Positions 988 through 44,781 of a stretch of DNA of 64,000 nt are shown piece after piece; the first letter of the stretch is position 1, and the number at the start of each line of letters is the position of its first letter. The notes beneath the pieces were generated by a model that was given only the letters and a program-made list of their open reading frames with translations, searched no databases and had not been told where the DNA came from. Location: IMG/VR virus record IMGVR_UViG_3300029908_000004, positions 1-64,000 of that record. The stretch is one strand, 5' to 3'. A program made the position numbers and the translations under genes.

Positions 988-1281
988 TTACATCTTATCG
1001 GGCTTGAACACTATACGTTTCTTCCCTTTGAATTGTGTTACAATCTTTCCTAATCTCCACAATCTCCTTGATGTAGGAGCTTTACGGATGGAAAGAGTCC
1101 CGAGGTTAGGGATTATTATCTCTTCACCTCGGGATATTGCTGCCTGTAAGACAGAAAATACTATGGATACAATAGCCTTAGATTTCCTGATGGGCAAACC
1201 CATCGTTGATGATACTAGCTTTGCTAGTTCTTTCTTGGTTATAGTTCTAGGCTTTTGCCCAAATGTATTCAATTGCCACAT
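988..1281 (-). CDS. HU/IHF-like DNA-binding protein
   Basis: TKKELAKLVS...SKAIVSIVFSVLQAAISRGEEIIIPNLGTLSIRK...KRIVFKP matches the HU/IHF pattern. Confidence 0.8.
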   Translation of the reverse strand: MWQLNTFGQKPRTITKKELAKLVSSTMGLPIRKSKAIVSIVFSVLQAAISRGEEIIIPNLGTLSIRKAPTSRRLWRLGKIVTQFKGKKRIVFKPDKM

Positions 1282-2236
1282 CTACTTTATTCACAATGTC
1301 TGGAATGATATCATCGTAGGACTTTTGCATGTGTCTGCATAGTATCTCTTCGATGGGGCCTTTTACAAAGCCTCTACCATCCTTTATTCTAGCTTCTATC
1401 TCTTTATGTGTTAATATACTACCAGTCTCATCGTATCTTTCTGATAAGTCTTCTCTGGCAGACATAACTATTTCGTCATGGACGACAAATAGGATTCTAG
1501 CATCTTCAGGACCGTAGTTTTTCTCTATCAATTCGTTGTAAACGCCAGCCATTGCTGGTTTTAGCATGTCAACGTTTCCAGCTTGAATAGGTTGATTACC
1601 AGCCCATCTACGTATTTGTGCTAGTAAACCATCTGCGTCTCTATCTTCAGCGGAAGGTAAAGTATAATGTCTAATCCTACCACGAGGAGATGTAGAATAC
1701 CCATAACGTACAGCATTGTTACCTGTTTCTTCTAACCATCTCTTCAAGACATGGAATTTAGCAAAGAAAGCATTTATGAAGTCTTGCGCTGCCTCTGGTG
1801 TCATCCCAGTCATTGCTGCAATTCTAGCAGCACCGGCACCATAAGTAGTGCCAAAGGTTACAGTCTTAATGTTGTTACGGATAGTAGATAATTCTTGGTG
1901 CCTAGGATGTAACGGATCCTTACGAGCTATATTAATAGTGTCATAATCAAAATTTAGTGAGGCACCAAATACTTCTACTGAATTATAACAATGTATGTCT
2001 TTACCTGAGTTAATAGCGGCTATTAGAACTGGATCACGGCTTAGGTGAGCCATAAGCTTCACTTCTATCTGTGCATAATCAGCAGATAGAATCCTATGTC
2101 CTTCTTGTGCTCTAATAGCCTCTCTAATATCAGGAACTCTGGTATAGATATCTGGTGAAACTTTACCATTTTCTTCTATGCGCGCATAGTATTCTTTAAG
2201 GCCGATTTTACCTATTGGCTTATAATTATATTCCAA
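1247..2236 (-). CDS. polA: Family A DNA polymerase, C-terminal (palm/fingers) subunit
   Basis: Motif A ILSADYAQIEVKLMAHLS, motif B RNNIKTVTFGTTYG, motif C ILFVVHDEIV. Confidence 0.93.
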   Translation of the reverse strand: MEYNYKPIGKIGLKEYYARIEENGKVSPDIYTRVPDIREAIRAQEGHRILSADYAQIEVKLMAHLSRDPVLIAAINSGKDIHCYNSVEVFGASLNFDYDTINIARKDPLHPRHQELSTIRNNIKTVTFGTTYGAGAARIAAMTGMTPEAAQDFINAFFAKFHVLKRWLEETGNNAVRYGYSTSPRGRIRHYTLPSAEDRDADGLLAQIRRWAGNQPIQAGNVDMLKPAMAGVYNELIEKNYGPEDARILFVVHDEIVMSAREDLSERYDETGSILTHKEIEARIKDGRGFVKGPIEEILCRHMQKSYDDIIPDIVNKVDVAIEYIWAKA

Positions 2237-2819
2237 TTGCTCCTTCTATTACTAGTTTTACTTTATCTAATGTGTCCTCTATCATTTTTCTGTATTCTAC
2301 AACAGATTTAGTATGCCCAAAACGAGAACATAATTTCATCCATATGGCTACACGAAGTACATCGTCTGGGGACCCGTTACTTTTTATTGTATTAGCTTTA
2401 TGAGATATAACCCAAGAGTTATTTTGTGTGTACCCCTCAATCGGAATGAATTTATCTATCGTTGCCGATTCCGGTACAGGTTTTTCTGTACCAATCATAA
2501 AGCTTGTTCCAAATACGGGGCATGTCTGATTTAGATACTCGTTAACAAAGTCCAATGTTATATCTATTGGAACGTTCTCCAGTCCTGAACGACGTTTAGC
2601 ATTGTTTAGTAAATATCTGGGTTGTTCAGCTTTCCTAGACTTTCTGTAATGTTCTTGTTTCTTAGCCCTCAATTCTATTGCGTTGTTGTGGTGGTGATCC
2701 CTACAGTTACAACGTCTAAGAGTTTGATGGTGTGTTAACTTCCCAGACCTATATTCCTGTAGTAAATCAGGATATTTTTCTAGTCTGGATAATAACTTGG
2801 CTTCTGATAATTTTTGCAT
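2226..2819 (-). mobile_element. Free-standing HNH-type homing endonuclease gene (HEG1)
   Basis: CPVFG...ATIDKFIPIEGYTQNNSWVISHKANTIK beta-beta-alpha motif; insertion flanked by a 7-nt direct repeat AGAGTTC (2134-2140 and 2861-2867, minus strand). Confidence 0.8.
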
Positions 2820-2837
2820 TGGTAATTCTCGTATACC

Positions 2838-3002
2838 TTACATAGTATAGGAGAATTGGTGAACTCTCCAAACAATTTTCTTGTATTGGGTGTTAACAAC
2901 CTCTAGGCCAGTGTCATCCTTGACCACTGGCCTTAAATCATAGTAATATTCTTTACCGTCTTTGATGCCGAGTGGTTGACGTTCGGCTACTATACTACCC
3001 AT
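2838..3002 (-). pseudogene. Displaced original 5' end of the polymerase C-subunit gene (54 aa)
   Basis: MGSIVAERQPLGIKDGKEYYY...KKIVWRV aligns with the current N-terminus MEYNYKPIGKIGLKEYY...PDIYTRV and breaks at the AGAGTTC repeat. Confidence 0.7.
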
Positions 3003-3004
3003 TA

Positions 3005-3454
3005 CTATTCTTCACCCTTTGCTCCATTTGGATCTTCTGTGTCATCCTCGTACAAATCACTAGAGTTAGTGTTATCGTCATTGTTCTCAGCGAGTTGACG
3101 ACCAAGGAGTTCTTGCTGTGCCCTCATGTTATTACGTAGTAACCTCTCAGTAAATCCTTCGAAAGTAATAACACCATTGTTATCTTTGTATGGGATCCAA
3201 ACACGATCACCAGCAATTTGTGTGAAATGAGTAGCTGCAGCCATAAGTAGTTGCAATTCAGCGATTTGTGCGTTGCCCCTACGAATCTGAGCCTGACTAA
3301 CTGCTTTACCAGCTTCACGTTCTGCTGTTACAGCATCAGTCTTTGCTGCTTCTAGATTTAGGAATAGCTGTTCGATTTCCTGTTGTGCCTCTGGTGATAG
3401 TTCATTAATTCTAATCTTTGTGGTTCGAAATGCTTTGCGGAATTGGTTTCCCAT
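3005..3454 (-). CDS. Hypothetical coiled-coil protein between the polymerase halves
   Basis: 149-aa ORF with SD (AGGAG), an alanine/glutamate-rich helix and an acidic tail. Confidence 0.75.
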   Translation of the reverse strand: MGNQFRKAFRTTKIRINELSPEAQQEIEQLFLNLEAAKTDAVTAEREAGKAVSQAQIRRGNAQIAELQLLMAAATHFTQIAGDRVWIPYKDNNGVITFEGFTERLLRNNMRAQQELLGRQLAENNDDNTNSSDLYEDDTEDPNGAKGEE

Positions 3455-3466
3455 AGCTATATTCTC

Positions 3467-3556
3467 CTATTGATACTTCATCCAAACATCTTTGAATTGC
3501 TTTTTAACAAATGCTAACTCTTTTGGATCTTTCACTACTGCGTAGCGCTCTTCCGG
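3467..3556 (-). pseudogene. Displaced original 3' end of the polymerase N-subunit gene
   Basis: PEERYAVVKDPKELAFVKKQFKDVWMKYQ* parallels the current end PTERFCEVKGEELSEIQQLFSEKIKQFTS*; it has no start codon. Confidence 0.7.
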
Positions 3557-3597
3557 ACTATCTGAGTTTCAATTTCGCTTGTTTTCGCTGGATCTAC

Positions 3598-3608
3598 TAT
3601 ACTATATA
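3598..3608 (+). promoter_or_regulatory. TATACTATATA promoter motif of HEG2
   Basis: Lies just upstream of SD AAGGAG and ATG 3626; the same motif precedes all six endonuclease genes. Confidence 0.6.
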
Positions 3609-3625
3609 ATAGCAAGGAGATCAAT

Positions 3626-4261
3626 ATGCGAGGTACTAAGTTAAAGTTAGTTAAAAATCAGGTATTTGGTTACCTAGAAATAATAGAGGAAGACGGATTC
3701 AAACTTCAACCTAGCAACTCTAAGAAGAACTTGAAGGGGATCCGCAAATACCTCTGGAAATGTAGATGTACAGCGCCTAGTATAAAAACCGGAATAGTTT
3801 GTAACAAAATAGTAACTATAGCCGGCTCTGATATGGTTTCTGGACGTGTTATAAGTTGTGGTTGTTGTAGGGGCCATTTCGGTATGGGTGGTTTAGGAAA
3901 AGAGTATTCAAAACGCCGTAACGGAATAGGTAATCCTGCTTTTAGGACTTTGTTACGTAGATATAAGGGTGGTGCTAAAGATCGTAGTATAAAATGGACA
4001 TTAACTGATGAAGAATTCCTGGGATTAACGAGTTCTCCTTGCTTTTATACAGGGAGGTTACCAAGTTCCGAATCCAGATCTGAGAAGTCCAATTTAGGAT
4101 TATATTTATACAATGGCATAGATAGACTAGATAGTTCTAAGGGATATACAAAGGATAATTGCGTACCTTGTTGTAAACAGGCAAACTTCGCTAAACATAC
4201 TCAATCTTTTGATGAATTCATTGAGATGTGTAATATGGTTTCAGACCGTTTTAGGAAGTAA
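3626..4261 (+). mobile_element. Antisense HNH homing endonuclease gene (HEG2)
   Basis: N-terminal WKCRC..C/SCGC element plus CFYTG...NGIDRLDSSKGYTKDNCVPCCKQANFAK; own SD and promoter. Confidence 0.88.
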
Positions 4262-5570
4262 ACTGTTTTATCTTTTCAGAGAAGAGTTGTTGTATCTCAC
4301 TTAGCTCTTCTCCCTTCACCTCACAAAACCTTTCCGTTGGGCGAGGCATTTGCTGGAAGTCACTAGAGTATCTACCTGTAGCGATTGTTCCCTTCTTAGA
4401 TAAACTACCGTCTCCAGAACCTAGTTGATTAAATTCTGGGTGTAACCGTCCAGTCTTTGTATTGACCCTCTTTAGTAGGTTTTCACCGTAAGTCGAAGTA
4501 ACTTTCATTACGTTAGAATACTCTGCTAATGCTTTAGCAATAGGGTGATCAATAGATTCCAATGTTTCTCTCTGGACATTTTCTATATCAAAGTCTAGAT
4601 TTCTCAACGCTGCCAATTTCTGAGCAGGGGAATTAAGATCAAATACATTCTTAACTTCTGGTATTAGGGATAATTCTACTTTACCTTTGCTTTTTAGTTC
4701 CTTGTCATAAGAATTGAGTATTTCTATTTCTAATTCTTTCTGCCTACTCTCCCAATAGGAGAGAGCTAGTTTAAGAGTGTCCCTATCTAAATTAACTCCA
4801 TTGAGTTCCATGGAAGCAGTCACAGGTAGTACGTTAAACTCATCTTGTGCTACTACTTCTAGTTTCCAATGTTTCAGTTGTTCTTTTTGTTCATTCATTA
4901 CTGGAAATAGTAGAATAATATCTCTGGCAGCGTAGTAAGCCATATCTTTGGATATCTTTTCTCCACGTTCTTTGAAGTGGATAAAGTCAGCTCTAACTTC
5001 CTTTGATATCATCCTATAAGGCTTATATCTACGTGCTAGATCTGCTAATCCTACCTTTATTCCATTCAAACCAGAAGTTAGTAGTTGTTCGGCTAGCATA
5101 GTATCATACATATTATTTATATGTATTTTATACTTAACAAATAAGTATTTGAAGTCATATACTAGGTTTTGACCTAGATGTAGAAGTGTTTTATTTTCTA
5201 GGACATCGGCGAGGTAAGGCACTAGTCCGGGTTGTATTAGAAATACTTTACTTTCATTACCTAATTGCAACAGTAATAATTTAGAACCTTCCCGCCAAGG
5301 ATCTAAACCAGATTTCTTATCTTCACCAGTAGTTTCTGTGTCTAACCCAATCGTACCCATTTCAATTAGGGTATCAACTATCCAAGACAGTTGTTTACAT
5401 TCTCTACCTTCATCAATAATTATCCATTGAGAACGAGGGACGGCTTCTGTCTCGAAGCCGTCCTCTAACCATTCTTTATAGCCAACAACATAATAGTTGA
5501 TTGGTATTTTCTCTTCTATTTGATGGCTTACTATCTCTATAGATTTGCCCCGTATTGGAGCTCTACTCAT
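4251..5570 (-). CDS. polA: Family A DNA polymerase, N-terminal subunit (3'-5' exonuclease plus thumb)
   Basis: ExoI GLDTETTG, ExoII GQNLVYDFKYL, ExoIII YAARD, and RLHPEFNQ...TGRYSS. Confidence 0.92.
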   Translation of the reverse strand: MSRAPIRGKSIEIVSHQIEEKIPINYYVVGYKEWLEDGFETEAVPRSQWIIIDEGRECKQLSWIVDTLIEMGTIGLDTETTGEDKKSGLDPWREGSKLLLLQLGNESKVFLIQPGLVPYLADVLENKTLLHLGQNLVYDFKYLFVKYKIHINNMYDTMLAEQLLTSGLNGIKVGLADLARRYKPYRMISKEVRADFIHFKERGEKISKDMAYYAARDIILLFPVMNEQKEQLKHWKLEVVAQDEFNVLPVTASMELNGVNLDRDTLKLALSYWESRQKELEIEILNSYDKELKSKGKVELSLIPEVKNVFDLNSPAQKLAALRNLDFDIENVQRETLESIDHPIAKALAEYSNVMKVTSTYGENLLKRVNTKTGRLHPEFNQLGSGDGSLSKKGTIATGRYSSDFQQMPRPTERFCEVKGEELSEIQQLFSEKIKQFTS

Positions 5571-5583
5571 TACTTAACCTCAT

Positions 5584-6159
5584 TCACTTTTCATTGAAAG
5601 GTCTATAAAATAGGGAGCTATACACAACCTGTGTTGCCATATCTCTCAATAACTCTAGATTACCTGATACCACACCAATAACTAAATCAAATGGGTACCC
5701 GTCTAATTGTGTTTCAGATGCGTGATTAGGATCTCTTGATGGGTCAATGAATTGTGTCCCATCTGGATTAAGTCTAATGATATCAATTACCAATCCACCT
5801 AATGATTTAATCCAGTTCGCTTCATTAATAAATCTTACATCCGTTATCACGGCGATTCCGGGTTCTTCTTGTAGTATTCTAGCGTTTACCTTACTTATCC
5901 AGCAATCTGGGTCTCTTGCTCTTTCTACTTCAGTACCTATGTACTGAAGCATCTTCGGATAATTATAGATTGGATCTGGTTTAGTATCCAATTCAATAAA
6001 TGGATATTTTATTACTAGACTCTCGTGGTTATCCCTACAAAAGATCTTCAATTCCTTCGCAAATGAATAAGTTCTTGCGTATGAATACTCTTCTAATATA
6101 GACTTGGCAAACGTGTCTTTACCTTGTCTAGCTTTGTGTCCTAGACCTATGATTAGCAT
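5584..6159 (-). CDS. Deoxynucleoside monophosphate kinase
   Basis: IIGLGHKARQGKDT P-loop, LQYIGTE, VITDVRFINEA, HASE. Confidence 0.9.
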   Translation of the reverse strand: MLIIGLGHKARQGKDTFAKSILEEYSYARTYSFAKELKIFCRDNHESLVIKYPFIELDTKPDPIYNYPKMLQYIGTEVERARDPDCWISKVNARILQEEPGIAVITDVRFINEANWIKSLGGLVIDIIRLNPDGTQFIDPSRDPNHASETQLDGYPFDLVIGVVSGNLELLRDMATQVVYSSLFYRPFNEK

Positions 6160-41448: not shown

Positions 41449-41488
41449 TTGACACTTTCGACTAAGTTATTCTATACTATATAGTTAT

Positions 41489-42154
41489 ATGATAACCCTA
41501 AGTATGGAACAATTTACCAAACTAAATAGTCGCTCACCAGTAGAATGTAAATGTGAACAATGTAACAGTCTTTTCTACAGAGTAAAACATGATTTACAGA
41601 CAGCTATTCGTAGGAAAGAACCAATATCATTTTGTTCGCCGAAGTGTTATGGTTTATACAGAAACACTAAGACTACTGTCAAATGTTTATGGTGTAAGTC
41701 TGAAGTAGTTAGAATACCAACTACTAAGAATGTCTTCTGTTCGAGATCGTGTTCTGCAAAATATAATAACACACATAAAACATTTGGGACTAGAAGATCG
41801 AAACTTGAGAGATTTCTAGAAGAACAAATAAAATTATCGTACCCCAATTTGGAGCTTATATGCAATAGCAAATCAGTCATCGGTTCAGAGTTAGATTTCT
41901 ATTTCCCGAGGCTCAGATTGGCGATAGAACTCAATGGTATTCTGCACTACGAACCAATCTATGGGACAGATAAATTCTCTAAAATTGTTGACAATGATAG
42001 ACAAAAAGTTAGATTATGTGAAGCTATGGGTATTGAGCTAGCAGTTATTAATTCTTCGTCATGTTCACGCATGAGCGCAGTATTTAAAACTAAGTATTTG
42101 GGGATAACACGTGAATTAATAGACTCTGTTATTGATAGAGGAAATTTGGGGTAG
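41489..42154 (+). mobile_element. Antisense PD-(D/E)XK/Vsr-like homing endonuclease gene with zinc fingers (HEG4)
   Basis: ELDFYFPRLRLAIELNGILHY; CSPKC/CSRSC repeats; TTGACA-18nt-TATACT promoter at 41449-41478. Confidence 0.8.
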
Positions 42155-44514: not shown

Positions 44515-44559
44515 AAACTAGAAACCTTTTGTCTATACTATATAATAGTGAGGTGATCA

Positions 44560-44781
44560 ATGAACGATAATTTGATTAAAATCTGCCGTAAATGTAAAAT
44601 CCCTAAAGATCGTGACGAATTCCCGTGGAAGAACAAATCCAAAGGAATTCGCCATAATACTTGTAAGCATTGTACACGGGACTATAGTGAAAACTATTAC
44701 AAGTCAAATCAAAATGAACTATCAGAGAAAGCTAAACTACACCAAAGGGAGAAAAGAGCTGCTAAACCAAATGTGGTTTAA
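44560..44781 (+). pseudogene. Truncated antisense homing endonuclease (N-terminal zinc finger only; HEG5)
   Basis: KICRKCKIPK...EF...TCKHC; promoter TATACTATATA at 44534-44544 and SD GAGGTG; no nuclease domain. Confidence 0.65.

What the first reader, a model, noticed from the sequence alone, without database searches (positions are those of the whole stretch)
3467..4340. HEG2 cassette brings a replacement C-terminus for the polymerase N-subunit
Seen: beyond the antisense HNH gene lies a start-less fragment, PEERYAVVKDPKELAFVKKQFKDVWMKYQ*, matching in length and pattern the tail now fused to the gene (PTERFCEVKGEELSEIQQLFSEKIKQFTS*). The new tail overlaps the HNH stop. Inference: the endonuclease invades an essential gene without an intron by carrying a diverged, cleavage-resistant copy of the part it displaces.
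Basis: partly seen in the sequence, partly recalled or inferred. Interest (0 to 1): 0.62.

Follow-up and report, generated by a model that had tools for sequence, protein, structure and literature searches.

The report
Homing endonuclease carrying a spare gene end
In a 215-kb peat phage, a mobile HNH nuclease gene sits inside the end of a DNA polymerase subunit gene and brings a foreign 29-codon replacement tail, while the original tail lies unused just downstream; this pattern is known from fungal mitochondria but I found no report of it in phages.

Summary

**What is in the window (minus strand):**
- Split PolA N-subunit body, 5570-4341, ending in the motif QQMPR.
- A 29-codon tail, 4340-4251.
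- An antisense PacI-like HNH gene (HEG2), 3626-4261. It overlaps the tail's end by 11 nt.
- A start-less second tail, 3556-3467.
- The conserved 149-aa gene.

**Relatives.** More than 100 relatives have the same split polymerase. In every HEG-free locus checked, the N-subunit abuts the ~150-aa gene.

**Which tail is native.**
- A tail-only HMM hits the fragment at E=4e-8. That is better than its hit on the tail now in use.
- The fragment's two best matches among 108 relatives are the two closest relatives by gene body, and it still aligns to one of them at DNA level.
- The tail now in use ranks 30th and 76th with those two relatives and resembles more distant lineages.
- So the fragment is the native tail, and the fused tail arrived with the endonuclease gene.

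**Other points.**
- No intron was detected.
- Independent peat and permafrost assemblies hold the same arrangement.
- A second endonuclease (HEG1) has done the mirror-image thing to the 5' end of the C-subunit gene.

**Not shown:** cleavage by HEG2, and immunity of the present allele to it.

**Closest known parallel:** fungal mitochondrial mobile ORFs that carry foreign C-termini.

The parts
4341..5570 (-). Native body of the split PolA N-subunit gene (3'-5' exonuclease plus the first part of the polymerase domain), ending in the conserved IATGRYSSDFQQMPR motif
   Evidence: Pfam DNA_pol_A_exo1 and DNA_pol_A. 72% and 68% identical to P0002 and P0003. DNA identity to HEG-free L004 is 22/23 nt just before the junction and stops 2 nt into the tail.
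4251..4340 (-). Foreign replacement tail (29 codons plus stop), fused in frame after R410
   Evidence: Fits the family tail HMM (E=3.9e-4). Ranks 30th and 76th with the two closest relatives. Best matches are lineages about 50% identical in body, and L116 (PERVFCRVEGEEL). No DNA similarity to L004's tail or to the old tail.
3626..4261 (+). HEG2: free-standing PacI-like HNH (beta-beta-alpha-metal) endonuclease gene of 211 aa, antisense to the polymerase, with an N-terminal Cys-rich domain
   Evidence: PHROG endonuclease VII / HNH families. Family profile vs PacI 3ldy E=3.8e-5. AF2 model pLDDT 85; Foldseek top hits PacI, Gme HNH and McrA. All family-invariant residues are kept. No HEG2 match in the other family loci.
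3557..3625 (+). HEG2 upstream region. It holds a promoter-like 16-mer CTATACTATATAATAG (3597-3612, containing TATAAT at 3605-3610) and an AAGGAG ribosome-binding site (3614-3619)
   Evidence: Sequence. The same 16-mer occurs exactly at 44533 and at G000:104075. The 13-mer core also lies upstream of HEG1 and of the HEG-like ORF at 41489. The generic sigma-70 scan did not flag it.
3467..3556 (-). Displaced native tail of the N-subunit gene (29 codons plus stop, no start codon). Its last bases carry the ribosome-binding site of the next gene
   Evidence: Tail HMM E=4.3e-8. Best matches are P0002 (score 86) and P0003 (64), which are the two closest relatives. 37/49 nt identical to L004's tail DNA, 0 of 500 shuffles as good.
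3005..3454 (-). Conserved 149-aa gene that lies between the two polymerase halves in the whole family (function unknown)
   Evidence: 81% identical to L004's orthologue. Directly abuts the N-subunit gene in HEG-free relatives.
2838..3002 (-). orf54: displaced native 5' end of the C-subunit gene (mirror image of the tail fragment)
   Evidence: Matches the N-termini of relatives' C-subunits (L004 60% identity, E=3e-13; L095 score 102). It breaks off after ...KIVWRV.
2226..2819 (-). HEG1: second endonuclease gene (197 aa), a distant relative of HEG2. Its stop overlaps the new start of the C-subunit gene
   Evidence: PHROG endonuclease families, E=7e-23. Aligns with the HEG2 family at 19% identity. 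No HEG1 match in the other family loci.
1247..2236 (-). PolA C-subunit gene. The first ~34 codons are foreign; the rest, from ...RV|PDIREAIRA on, is native
   Evidence: Pfam DNA_pol_A. Aligns to L004 only from residue 30, at 73% identity.

Best explanation
A cassette of about 784 bp (window 3557-4340) has been inserted into the 3' end of the phage's split PolA N-subunit gene. The insertion point is the R410/P411 codon boundary, directly after the conserved QQMPR motif.

The cassette carries three things:
- a free-standing PacI-like HNH homing endonuclease gene on the opposite strand;
- that gene's own promoter-like element and ribosome-binding site;
- a foreign 29-codon copy of the polymerase tail, which overlaps the endonuclease's 3' end by 11 nt in the convergent direction.

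The foreign tail is read in frame, so the essential subunit stays complete. The native tail, its stop codon and the ribosome-binding site of the next gene were pushed 784 bp downstream. They persist there without a start codon.

Most likely history (inferred):
- The endonuclease cut a HEG-free allele at or near the motif/tail boundary.
- Repair copied from a HEG-bearing, more distant phage.
- On one side the crossover was homologous, within the conserved motif.
- On the other side the join was illegitimate and one-sided, because the tail DNA was too diverged.
- This duplicated the tail instead of replacing it.

Both halves of the native sequence are still in the genome, but 784 bp apart. So only a recognition site that spans the R410/P411 junction would have been destroyed, and I predict the site lies there.

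Shown: the anatomy, that the old tail is native, that the new tail is foreign, the HNH fold, and that relatives lack the HEG. Inferred: nuclease activity, causality and immunity.
For: - **Synteny.** HEG-free relatives run N-subunit, ~150-aa gene, C-subunit, with the genes abutting.
- **The tail is needed.** All 109 split N-subunits carry a tail of 23-54 aa with a shared pattern. In the unsplit relative P0062 the tail is part of one ~75-aa insertion between QQIPR and the IR.AF-type motif.
- **The fragment is a true tail homologue.** HMM E=4.3e-8, and the window is the only locus with two copies.
- **Phylogenetic discordance.** The fragment ranks P0002 and P0003 1st and 2nd of 108. The fused tail ranks them 30th and 76th. 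42 relatives' tails score higher against the fused tail than the fragment does.
- **DNA.** The fragment aligns to L004 (0 of 500 shuffles as good). The fused tail does not align to L004, and the two tails do not align to each other significantly. Homology of the gene body to L004 ends 2 nt into the tail.
- **HEG2 is an intact HNH-superfamily nuclease**.
- **Family habit.** A 40%-identical homologue sits just after the C-subunit gene of a related split polA. Other homologues are free-standing, and the one whose locus DNA could be read (P0130) lies on the strand opposite its neighbours.
- **Recurrence.** A second endonuclease has made the mirror-image structure at the 5' end of the C-subunit gene. 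The architecture therefore occurs twice within 2.3 kb, each time with an endonuclease gene.
- **No intron**.
- **Precedents.** Fungal mobile ORFs carrying foreign C-termini (PMC3630166). [quoted passage not shown]
Against: - No donor with this tail plus a close HEG2 orthologue was found. The nearest HEG2 homologues are 40% identical, and there is no DNA match to the cassette's tail.
- No HEG-free variant of this same phage was seen.
- Cleavage activity, the target site and immunity are untested.
- Tails are short (29 aa), so any single pairwise score is weak. The case rests on ranks, the HMM and the DNA match together.
- Pfam's HNH models do not hit HEG2.
Confidence: 0.7

Rival explanations
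1. Passive mosaicism. A block made of a foreign tail plus a neighbouring endonuclease gene entered by ordinary illegitimate recombination between co-infecting phages. HEG2 was a passenger, or is now inactive, and played no causal part.
For: The region between the polymerase halves is a hot spot for unrelated insertions in relatives. L095 has an extra 127-aa ORF and L100 has two extra genes. No cleavage data exist and no donor was identified.
Against: Both end-duplication events in this locus are tied to an endonuclease gene. Both inner junctions fall at the edge of a highly conserved motif (QQMPR|P and WRV|PD), as expected for break repair primed in conserved DNA. HEG2 keeps all family-invariant residues.
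Confidence: 0.15
2. The fused PTERF tail is native, and the downstream fragment is a passenger piece of another phage's polymerase that arrived with HEG2.
For: In principle either copy could be the newcomer. The fused tail correlates weakly with overall body similarity across the family (rho 0.37).
Against: The fragment matches the two closest relatives best, at both protein and DNA level. It is joined to the native 149-aa gene (81% identical to L004) with the family's usual stop / ribosome-binding site / start spacing. The fused tail is the odd one out.
Confidence: 0.05
3. The tail was duplicated in place, an endonuclease gene landed between the copies, and one copy then diverged.
For: The two tails have the same length and a similar pattern.
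Against: 42 of 108 relatives' tails are closer to the fused tail than the fragment is. The two copies share no significant DNA similarity (18 vs 15.0+/-2.3 in shuffles), although the fragment still aligns to L004.
Confidence: 0.04
4. The cassette is an intron with an antisense endonuclease gene. Splicing joins QQMPR to the old PEERY tail, and the 'new tail' is only read-through into the intron.
For: Group I introns with HNH genes are known in phage DNA polymerase genes (e.g. PMC3428280, listed). Relatives L094 and L013 have near-seamless ~0.7-0.8 kb insertions with HNH genes inside the C-subunit gene.
Against: Rfam finds no intron at E<=1 on either strand. The flank shows no unusual RNA fold (z=-0.46). 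The 'read-through' is itself a family-type tail of exactly native length. The endonuclease is antisense.
Confidence: 0.03

Closest known systems
Mobile endonuclease ORFs (mORFs) of fungal mitochondria that carry a foreign C-terminus: Allomyces macrogynus atp6; Glomus sp. atp6, atp9, cox2 and nad3 (PMC3630166)
   Same: The layout is the same: host gene core, inserted foreign C-terminus in frame, endonuclease ORF, then the native C-terminus left downstream. As there, the native copy resembles close relatives more than the inserted one does. No intron is involved.
   Different: Here the host is a phage, not an organelle. The endonuclease is a PacI-like HNH rather than LAGLIDADG or GIY-YIG. It lies antisense with a convergent 11-nt overlap, not in phase or on the same strand. 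The target is one subunit of an already split DNA polymerase. A second cassette does the mirror-image replacement of a 5' end.
Free-standing homing endonucleases of T4-like phages that split or sit beside essential genes: mobE in Aeh1 nrdA, mobA in gene 60, a seg gene at gene 43 (PMC2988022)
   Same: A free-standing HEG inserted in or next to a conserved replication or nucleotide-metabolism gene. The host protein stays functional, in pieces. Presence among relatives is sporadic.
   Different: As the review describes them, those insertions cut a gene into two cistrons; it does not describe a duplicated gene end. Here the HEG supplies a homologous substitute for the displaced gene end, and the original end is retained.
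One-sided, illegitimate double-strand-break repair during intron homing in T4 (Parker, Belisle and Belfort 1999, cited in PMC2988022)
   Same: It gives a mechanism in which homology on only one side of the break leads to junctions at microhomologies. I infer that this could insert an element at a site and leave the recipient's own gene end in place. This is the proposed origin of the outer junction here.
   Different: That is a laboratory result with the td intron. Here it is only inferred, from a natural end-product.
PacI restriction endonuclease (PDB 3ldy)
   Same: Closest solved relative of HEG2's catalytic domain, by profile (E=3.8e-5) and by fold (Foldseek rank 1). They share the DR.DS..GY...N....C..N..K core.
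   Different: PacI is a 142-aa restriction enzyme. HEG2 has an extra N-terminal Cys-rich domain, presumably DNA-binding, and the genomic behaviour of a homing endonuclease.

Membership tests
HNH / His-Me finger (beta-beta-alpha-metal) endonucleases | beta-beta-alpha-metal fold of the catalytic domain | tested here: met
   AF2 model has mean pLDDT 85. The Foldseek top hits are all HNH enzymes: PacI (E=1.2e-3, prob 1.00), Gme HNH nickase (prob 0.98) and EcoKMcrA.
HNH / His-Me finger (beta-beta-alpha-metal) endonucleases | Conserved catalytic-core sequence motif | tested here: inconclusive
   The PacI-type core (D166, R167, Y174, N178, N187, K190 and Cys ligands) is invariant or nearly so in 17 homologues and is kept in HEG2. 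The profile matches PacI at E=3.8e-5. However, no Pfam HNH model matches, even at E<=10.
HNH / His-Me finger (beta-beta-alpha-metal) endonucleases | Metal-dependent DNA cleavage | not testable with these tools
   Needs purified protein.
Free-standing homing endonuclease genes | Sporadic presence in otherwise syntenic relatives | tested here: met
   HEG2 is absent from all other family loci, while the flanking genes are conserved.
Free-standing homing endonuclease genes | Not inside an intron or intein; has its own expression signals | tested here: met
   No Rfam intron. The ORF is separate and antisense, with an AAGGAG site and a TATAAT-containing 16-mer shared with other endonuclease-like ORFs. 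Promoter function itself is not shown.
Free-standing homing endonuclease genes | Cleaves the HEG-free allele and is copied into it (homing) | not testable with these tools
   No HEG-free allele of this phage was found in contigs. Needs an assay.
mORF-type gene hybrids (endonuclease ORF carrying a foreign gene terminus) | Inserted terminus in frame with the host gene core, with the native terminus retained beyond the endonuclease ORF | tested here: met
mORF-type gene hybrids (endonuclease ORF carrying a foreign gene terminus) | The native terminus is closer to near relatives than the inserted terminus is | tested here: met
   Ranks 1 and 2 versus 30 and 76 of 108. Only the fragment matches L004 at DNA level.
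mORF-type gene hybrids (endonuclease ORF carrying a foreign gene terminus) | LAGLIDADG or GIY-YIG endonuclease on the same strand, often in phase, in an organelle genome | tested here: not met
   Here it is an HNH enzyme, antisense, in a phage genome. So this works like a mORF hybrid but is not a member of that lineage.
Group I intron with an internal HEG | Recognisable intron RNA core flanking the HEG | tested here: not met
   No Rfam hit at E<=1 in 1200-5700 on either strand. The flank fold has z=-0.46.

The most novel reading that the evidence does not exclude
Endonuclease cassettes that bring their own substitute gene ends may be a general, intron-free way for phage homing endonucleases to enter open reading frames. 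This locus would then show both versions at once. HEG2 replaces a 3' end and HEG1 replaces a 5' end. The two replaced pieces are the two halves of the polymerase's split-specific insertion, which is contiguous in the unsplit relative P0062. Repeated swaps of this kind would be shuffling the N/C subunit interface between phage lineages, and an event of this type could have created the split in the first place.
Probability: 0.3. Interest if true: 0.68.

Novelty: new variant of a known kind. Interest (0 to 1): 0.5.

Why it matters
It is a clean natural example of how a selfish endonuclease gene can sit inside an essential phage gene with neither an intron nor an intein. It brings a working substitute for the part it displaces.

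The old and new ends are both still present. The insertion point is mapped to within a few bases, and that gives a specific prediction for where the enzyme cuts.

It links three things: a pattern described in fungal mitochondria, phage homing endonuclease biology, and laboratory work on one-sided break repair in T4. It also shows endonuclease-driven exchange of short protein segments between polymerases that are only about 50% identical.

Tried and rejected
- **blastn against GenBank phages.** Found no related locus. tblastn found only polymerases at or below 30% identity.
- **IMG/VR.** It holds only this phage and relatives about 40% identical. An exact search for the fragment's DNA found only this phage, so no HEG-free variant turned up.
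- **Contigs from four runs.** No joints skipping the cassette. Contigs drop rare variants, so this is not evidence that such alleles are absent.
- **Remnant of the QQMPR motif upstream of the fragment (3557-3700).** Not significant against the gene or against L004 (234 and 343 of 500 shuffles as good). The duplication therefore starts at about 3556.
- **Donor hunt.** No DNA match for the new tail or the cassette in any fetched locus. The only hit is to L008, which holds a HEG2 homologue, and it covers the nuclease gene alone.
- **Generic sigma-70 and terminator scan.** Promoter-like sites were no more than expected by chance (5 vs 6.6+/-2.2 in shuffles), and none lies upstream of HEG2. Four terminator-like sites (vs 1.4+/-1.1) were not followed up.
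- **GC content.** Does not set the cassette apart.
- **Pfam.** No hit for HEG2, HEG1 or the 149-aa protein.
- **Rfam and RNA folding.** Nothing found.
- **Not run.** I did not run the big representative protein search, because the word search already gave more than 100 relatives.
- **Length limits of the word search.** The N-subunit query could see proteins of 241-768 aa, so the unsplit 762-aa relative was visible. The HEG2 query could see 116-369 aa.
Full report
**Setting**

The window is the first 64 kb of a 215-kb virus record, which CheckV estimates to be complete. Runs that hold it are peat and permafrost metagenomes.

On the minus strand the locus reads as follows:

| Feature | Coordinates | Note |
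|---|---|---|
| PolA N-subunit | 5570-4251 | 439 aa; 3'-5' exonuclease plus the start of the polymerase domain |
| HEG2 | 3626-4261 | on the plus strand |
| Start-less ORF fragment | 3556-3467 | |
| 149-aa gene | 3454-3005 | |
| 54-aa ORF (orf54) | 3002-2838 | |
| HEG1 | 2819-2226 | |
| PolA C-subunit | 2236-1247 | 329 aa; begins just before motif A (DYAQIE) |

**Observation**

- The fragment translates to (S)PEERYAVVKDPKELAFVKKQFKDVWMKYQ*. A stop lies four codons upstream and there is no ATG.
- The N-subunit ends in QQMPR-PTERFCEVKGEELSEIQQLFSEKIKQFTS*.
- Both tails are 29 codons long.
- The HEG2 stop (4259-4261) and the N-subunit stop (4251-4253) overlap convergently by 11 nt.

**The family**

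A word search with the N-subunit found more than 100 split N-subunits of 430-477 aa, mostly on contigs of phage size and up to about 230 kb. It also found one unsplit 762-aa relative.

All 109 split proteins carry a tail of 23-54 aa after the QQxP[RK] motif, with a common pattern P..rY..V...EL..V..LF.

In the unsplit relative P0062, this tail and the N-terminal extension of the C-subunit form one continuous insertion of about 75 aa between QQIPR and the IR.AF-type motif. Ordinary PolA enzymes have only about 4 residues there. The tail is therefore a conserved, family-specific part of the enzyme, and the split runs through that insertion.

**HEG-free relatives**

In the loci of P0002, P0003 (L004) and P0004 (L005-L007), and in most other family loci fetched, the order is N-subunit, then a gene of ~145-154 aa, then the C-subunit. 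The genes abut or overlap by a few bases. None of the other loci contains HEG2 or HEG1. The window therefore carries two insertions relative to the family ground plan.

**Which tail is native?**

- **HMM test.** I built an HMM from the relatives' tails only, leaving out the window's own sequences. I searched it against 8,240 six-frame peptides from the whole window and 25 family loci. It hits the fragment at E=4.3e-8, more strongly than the fused tail (E=3.9e-4). No other locus has a second hit.
- **Ranking by relatedness.** The two relatives closest in gene body are P0002 (72% identity) and P0003 (68%). They rank 1st and 2nd of 108 for the fragment (scores 86 and 64), but 30th and 76th for the fused tail (39 and 25). 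The fused tail's best partners are lineages about 50-59% identical in body (P0019, P0039, P0071 and P0004, scores 55-57) and the distant L116, which reads PERVFCRVEGEEL.
- **Not a local duplicate.** The two window tails score only 33 against each other. 42 relatives' tails are closer to the fused tail than the fragment is.
- **DNA level.** The fragment aligns to L004's tail region at 37/49 nt (score 33 against 16.4+/-2.3 in shuffles, 0 of 500 as good). The fused tail does not align to L004. The two tails do not align to each other significantly.

Conclusion: the fragment is the native tail and the fused tail is foreign.

**Junctions**

- Identity between the window's gene body and L004 is 22/23 nt across the QQMPR-coding DNA. 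It stops 2 nt into the tail.
- Homology of the fragment to relatives begins at its first codon (CCG GAA GAG CGC TAC; compare L005's CCG GAA GAA CGA TAT).
- The 140 nt upstream of the fragment show no significant similarity to the gene.
- The event therefore looks like a simple insertion of 3557-4340 (about 784 bp) at the R410/P411 boundary. Both tails begin with CC, so the junction is ambiguous by 2 nt.

**The endonuclease**

- **Sequence.** HEG2 has no Pfam hit. It matches PHROG endonuclease VII / HNH families. A profile of 17 homologues matches the HNH restriction enzyme PacI at E=3.8e-5.
- **Fold.** The AF2 model has pLDDT 85. Foldseek's best hits are PacI, the Gme HNH nickase and McrA.
- **Conservation.** HEG2 keeps all family-invariant residues.
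- **Homologues.** They are at most 40% identical and free-standing. P0130 lies on the strand opposite its neighbours. One lies directly after the C-subunit gene of a related split polA.

**Expression signals**

Upstream of HEG2 lie AAGGAG (3614-3619) and a 16-mer, CTATACTATATAATAG (3597-3612).
- The 16-mer recurs exactly before a 73-aa endonuclease remnant at 44560, and at a non-coding site at 104075 in the genome.
- Its 13-mer core also precedes HEG1 and a third endonuclease-like ORF at 41489.
- The count alone is not striking (4 matches against 0.98 expected; 3 of 100 shuffles as many). What stands out is the position: all four window matches lie roughly 5 to 20 nt upstream of the start of an endonuclease-like ORF.

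**Alternatives tested**

- No intron was detected, and the flank shows no unusual RNA fold.
- Separate assemblies and runs hold the same arrangement. An RNA-library contig spans 3423-4375, which is suggestive only, because DNA can be present in such libraries.
- No HEG-free allele of this phage was seen.

**Mechanism**

Shown:
- the anatomy;
- that the displaced copy is native and the fused copy foreign;
- the HNH fold;
- the absence of HEG2 from relatives.

Inferred:
- HEG2 cut a HEG-free allele near the motif/tail boundary.
- Repair was templated by a HEG-bearing phage of a more distant lineage.
- The crossover was homologous in the conserved motif on one side and illegitimate on the other. 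This is the one-sided repair described for T4.
- The result was duplication of the tail rather than replacement.

Two further inferences follow:
- Both native half-sequences remain in the genome, 784 bp apart. Only a site spanning the junction would be destroyed, which predicts where the enzyme cuts.
- The last bases of the old tail carry the ribosome-binding site of the 149-aa gene (TAGGAGAA, 7 nt before its ATG). That gives a reason for at least the 3' end of the fragment to be kept.

**The mirror image**

- orf54 matches the N-termini of relatives' C-subunits (L004 60% identity, E=3e-13; L095 score 102). It breaks off after KIVWRV.
- The present C-subunit aligns to L004 only from residue 30 onward.
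- Its new first ~34 codons start inside the end of HEG1.
- So the same architecture occurs twice in 2.3 kb, each time with an endonuclease and each time with the inner junction at the edge of a conserved motif. This recurrence is the main argument that the endonucleases are causal and not passengers.

**Comparison with what is known**

The layout matches the mobile endonuclease ORFs of fungal mitochondria that carry a foreign C-terminus and leave the native one downstream. The differences here are:
- the nuclease family (HNH);
- the antisense, overlapping orientation;
- the host (a phage);
- the target (one subunit of an already split polymerase);
- the presence of a 5'-end version.

Phage free-standing endonucleases are known to split essential genes. 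My three library searches found no phage case with a retained, displaced gene end. The library is incomplete, so this is not proof of novelty.

**Verdict**

- It is a new variant of a known kind.
- Interest is moderate.

Noticed in passing
window 2226-3002 (-), with 1247-2236: HEG1 does the mirror-image thing. orf54 (3002-2838) is the displaced native 5' end of the C-subunit gene. HEG1 is followed by a foreign ~34-codon 5' end whose start overlaps HEG1's stop.
   Followed up: partly
window 3597-3612, 2838-2850 (-), 41472-41484, 44533-44548; G000:C1:104075-104087: A TATAAT-containing motif (CTATACTAT[A/G]TAA, exact 16-mer CTATACTATATAATAG at three sites). It lies roughly 5 to 20 nt upstream of four endonuclease-like ORFs: HEG1, HEG2, ORF 41489-42154 and the 73-aa remnant at 44560-44781. 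It also lies before a non-coding, hairpin-rich stretch at 104075. This may be a promoter class shared by the genome's endonuclease genes.
   Followed up: partly
window 3005-3454 (-): A conserved gene of ~145-154 aa sits between the two polymerase halves throughout the family. It has no Pfam or PHROG hit (only a weak FlxA-like match) and its function is unknown. It could be a third subunit or an assembly factor of the split polymerase.
   Followed up: no
L094 3251-4047 and L013 8652-9327: In two relatives the C-subunit gene is interrupted again, near residue 130, by ~0.7-0.8 kb that contains an HNH gene (antisense in L094). The exon match is nearly seamless. This could be an intron or a further gene split.
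   Followed up: no
L095 803-1186; L100 3638-4482: Other relatives carry unrelated extra ORFs at the same inter-subunit junctions: a 127-aa ORF after the N-subunit gene in L095, and 68-aa and 213-aa ORFs before the C-subunit gene in L100. These junctions are insertion hot spots.
   Followed up: no
L005 3491-5877 versus L006 3284-5773: In two contigs that encode the identical P0004 N-subunit, the class II ribonucleotide reductase is called as two ORFs (581 + 226 aa) in one and as a single 829-aa ORF in the other. This is either another gene in pieces or a sequencing frameshift.
   Followed up: no
P0062 (762 aa) and L130 165-1046: Unsplit members of the same polymerase family exist, in which the tail and the C-subunit N-terminus are one continuous insertion. 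They are useful for dating the split and finding its cause.
   Followed up: partly
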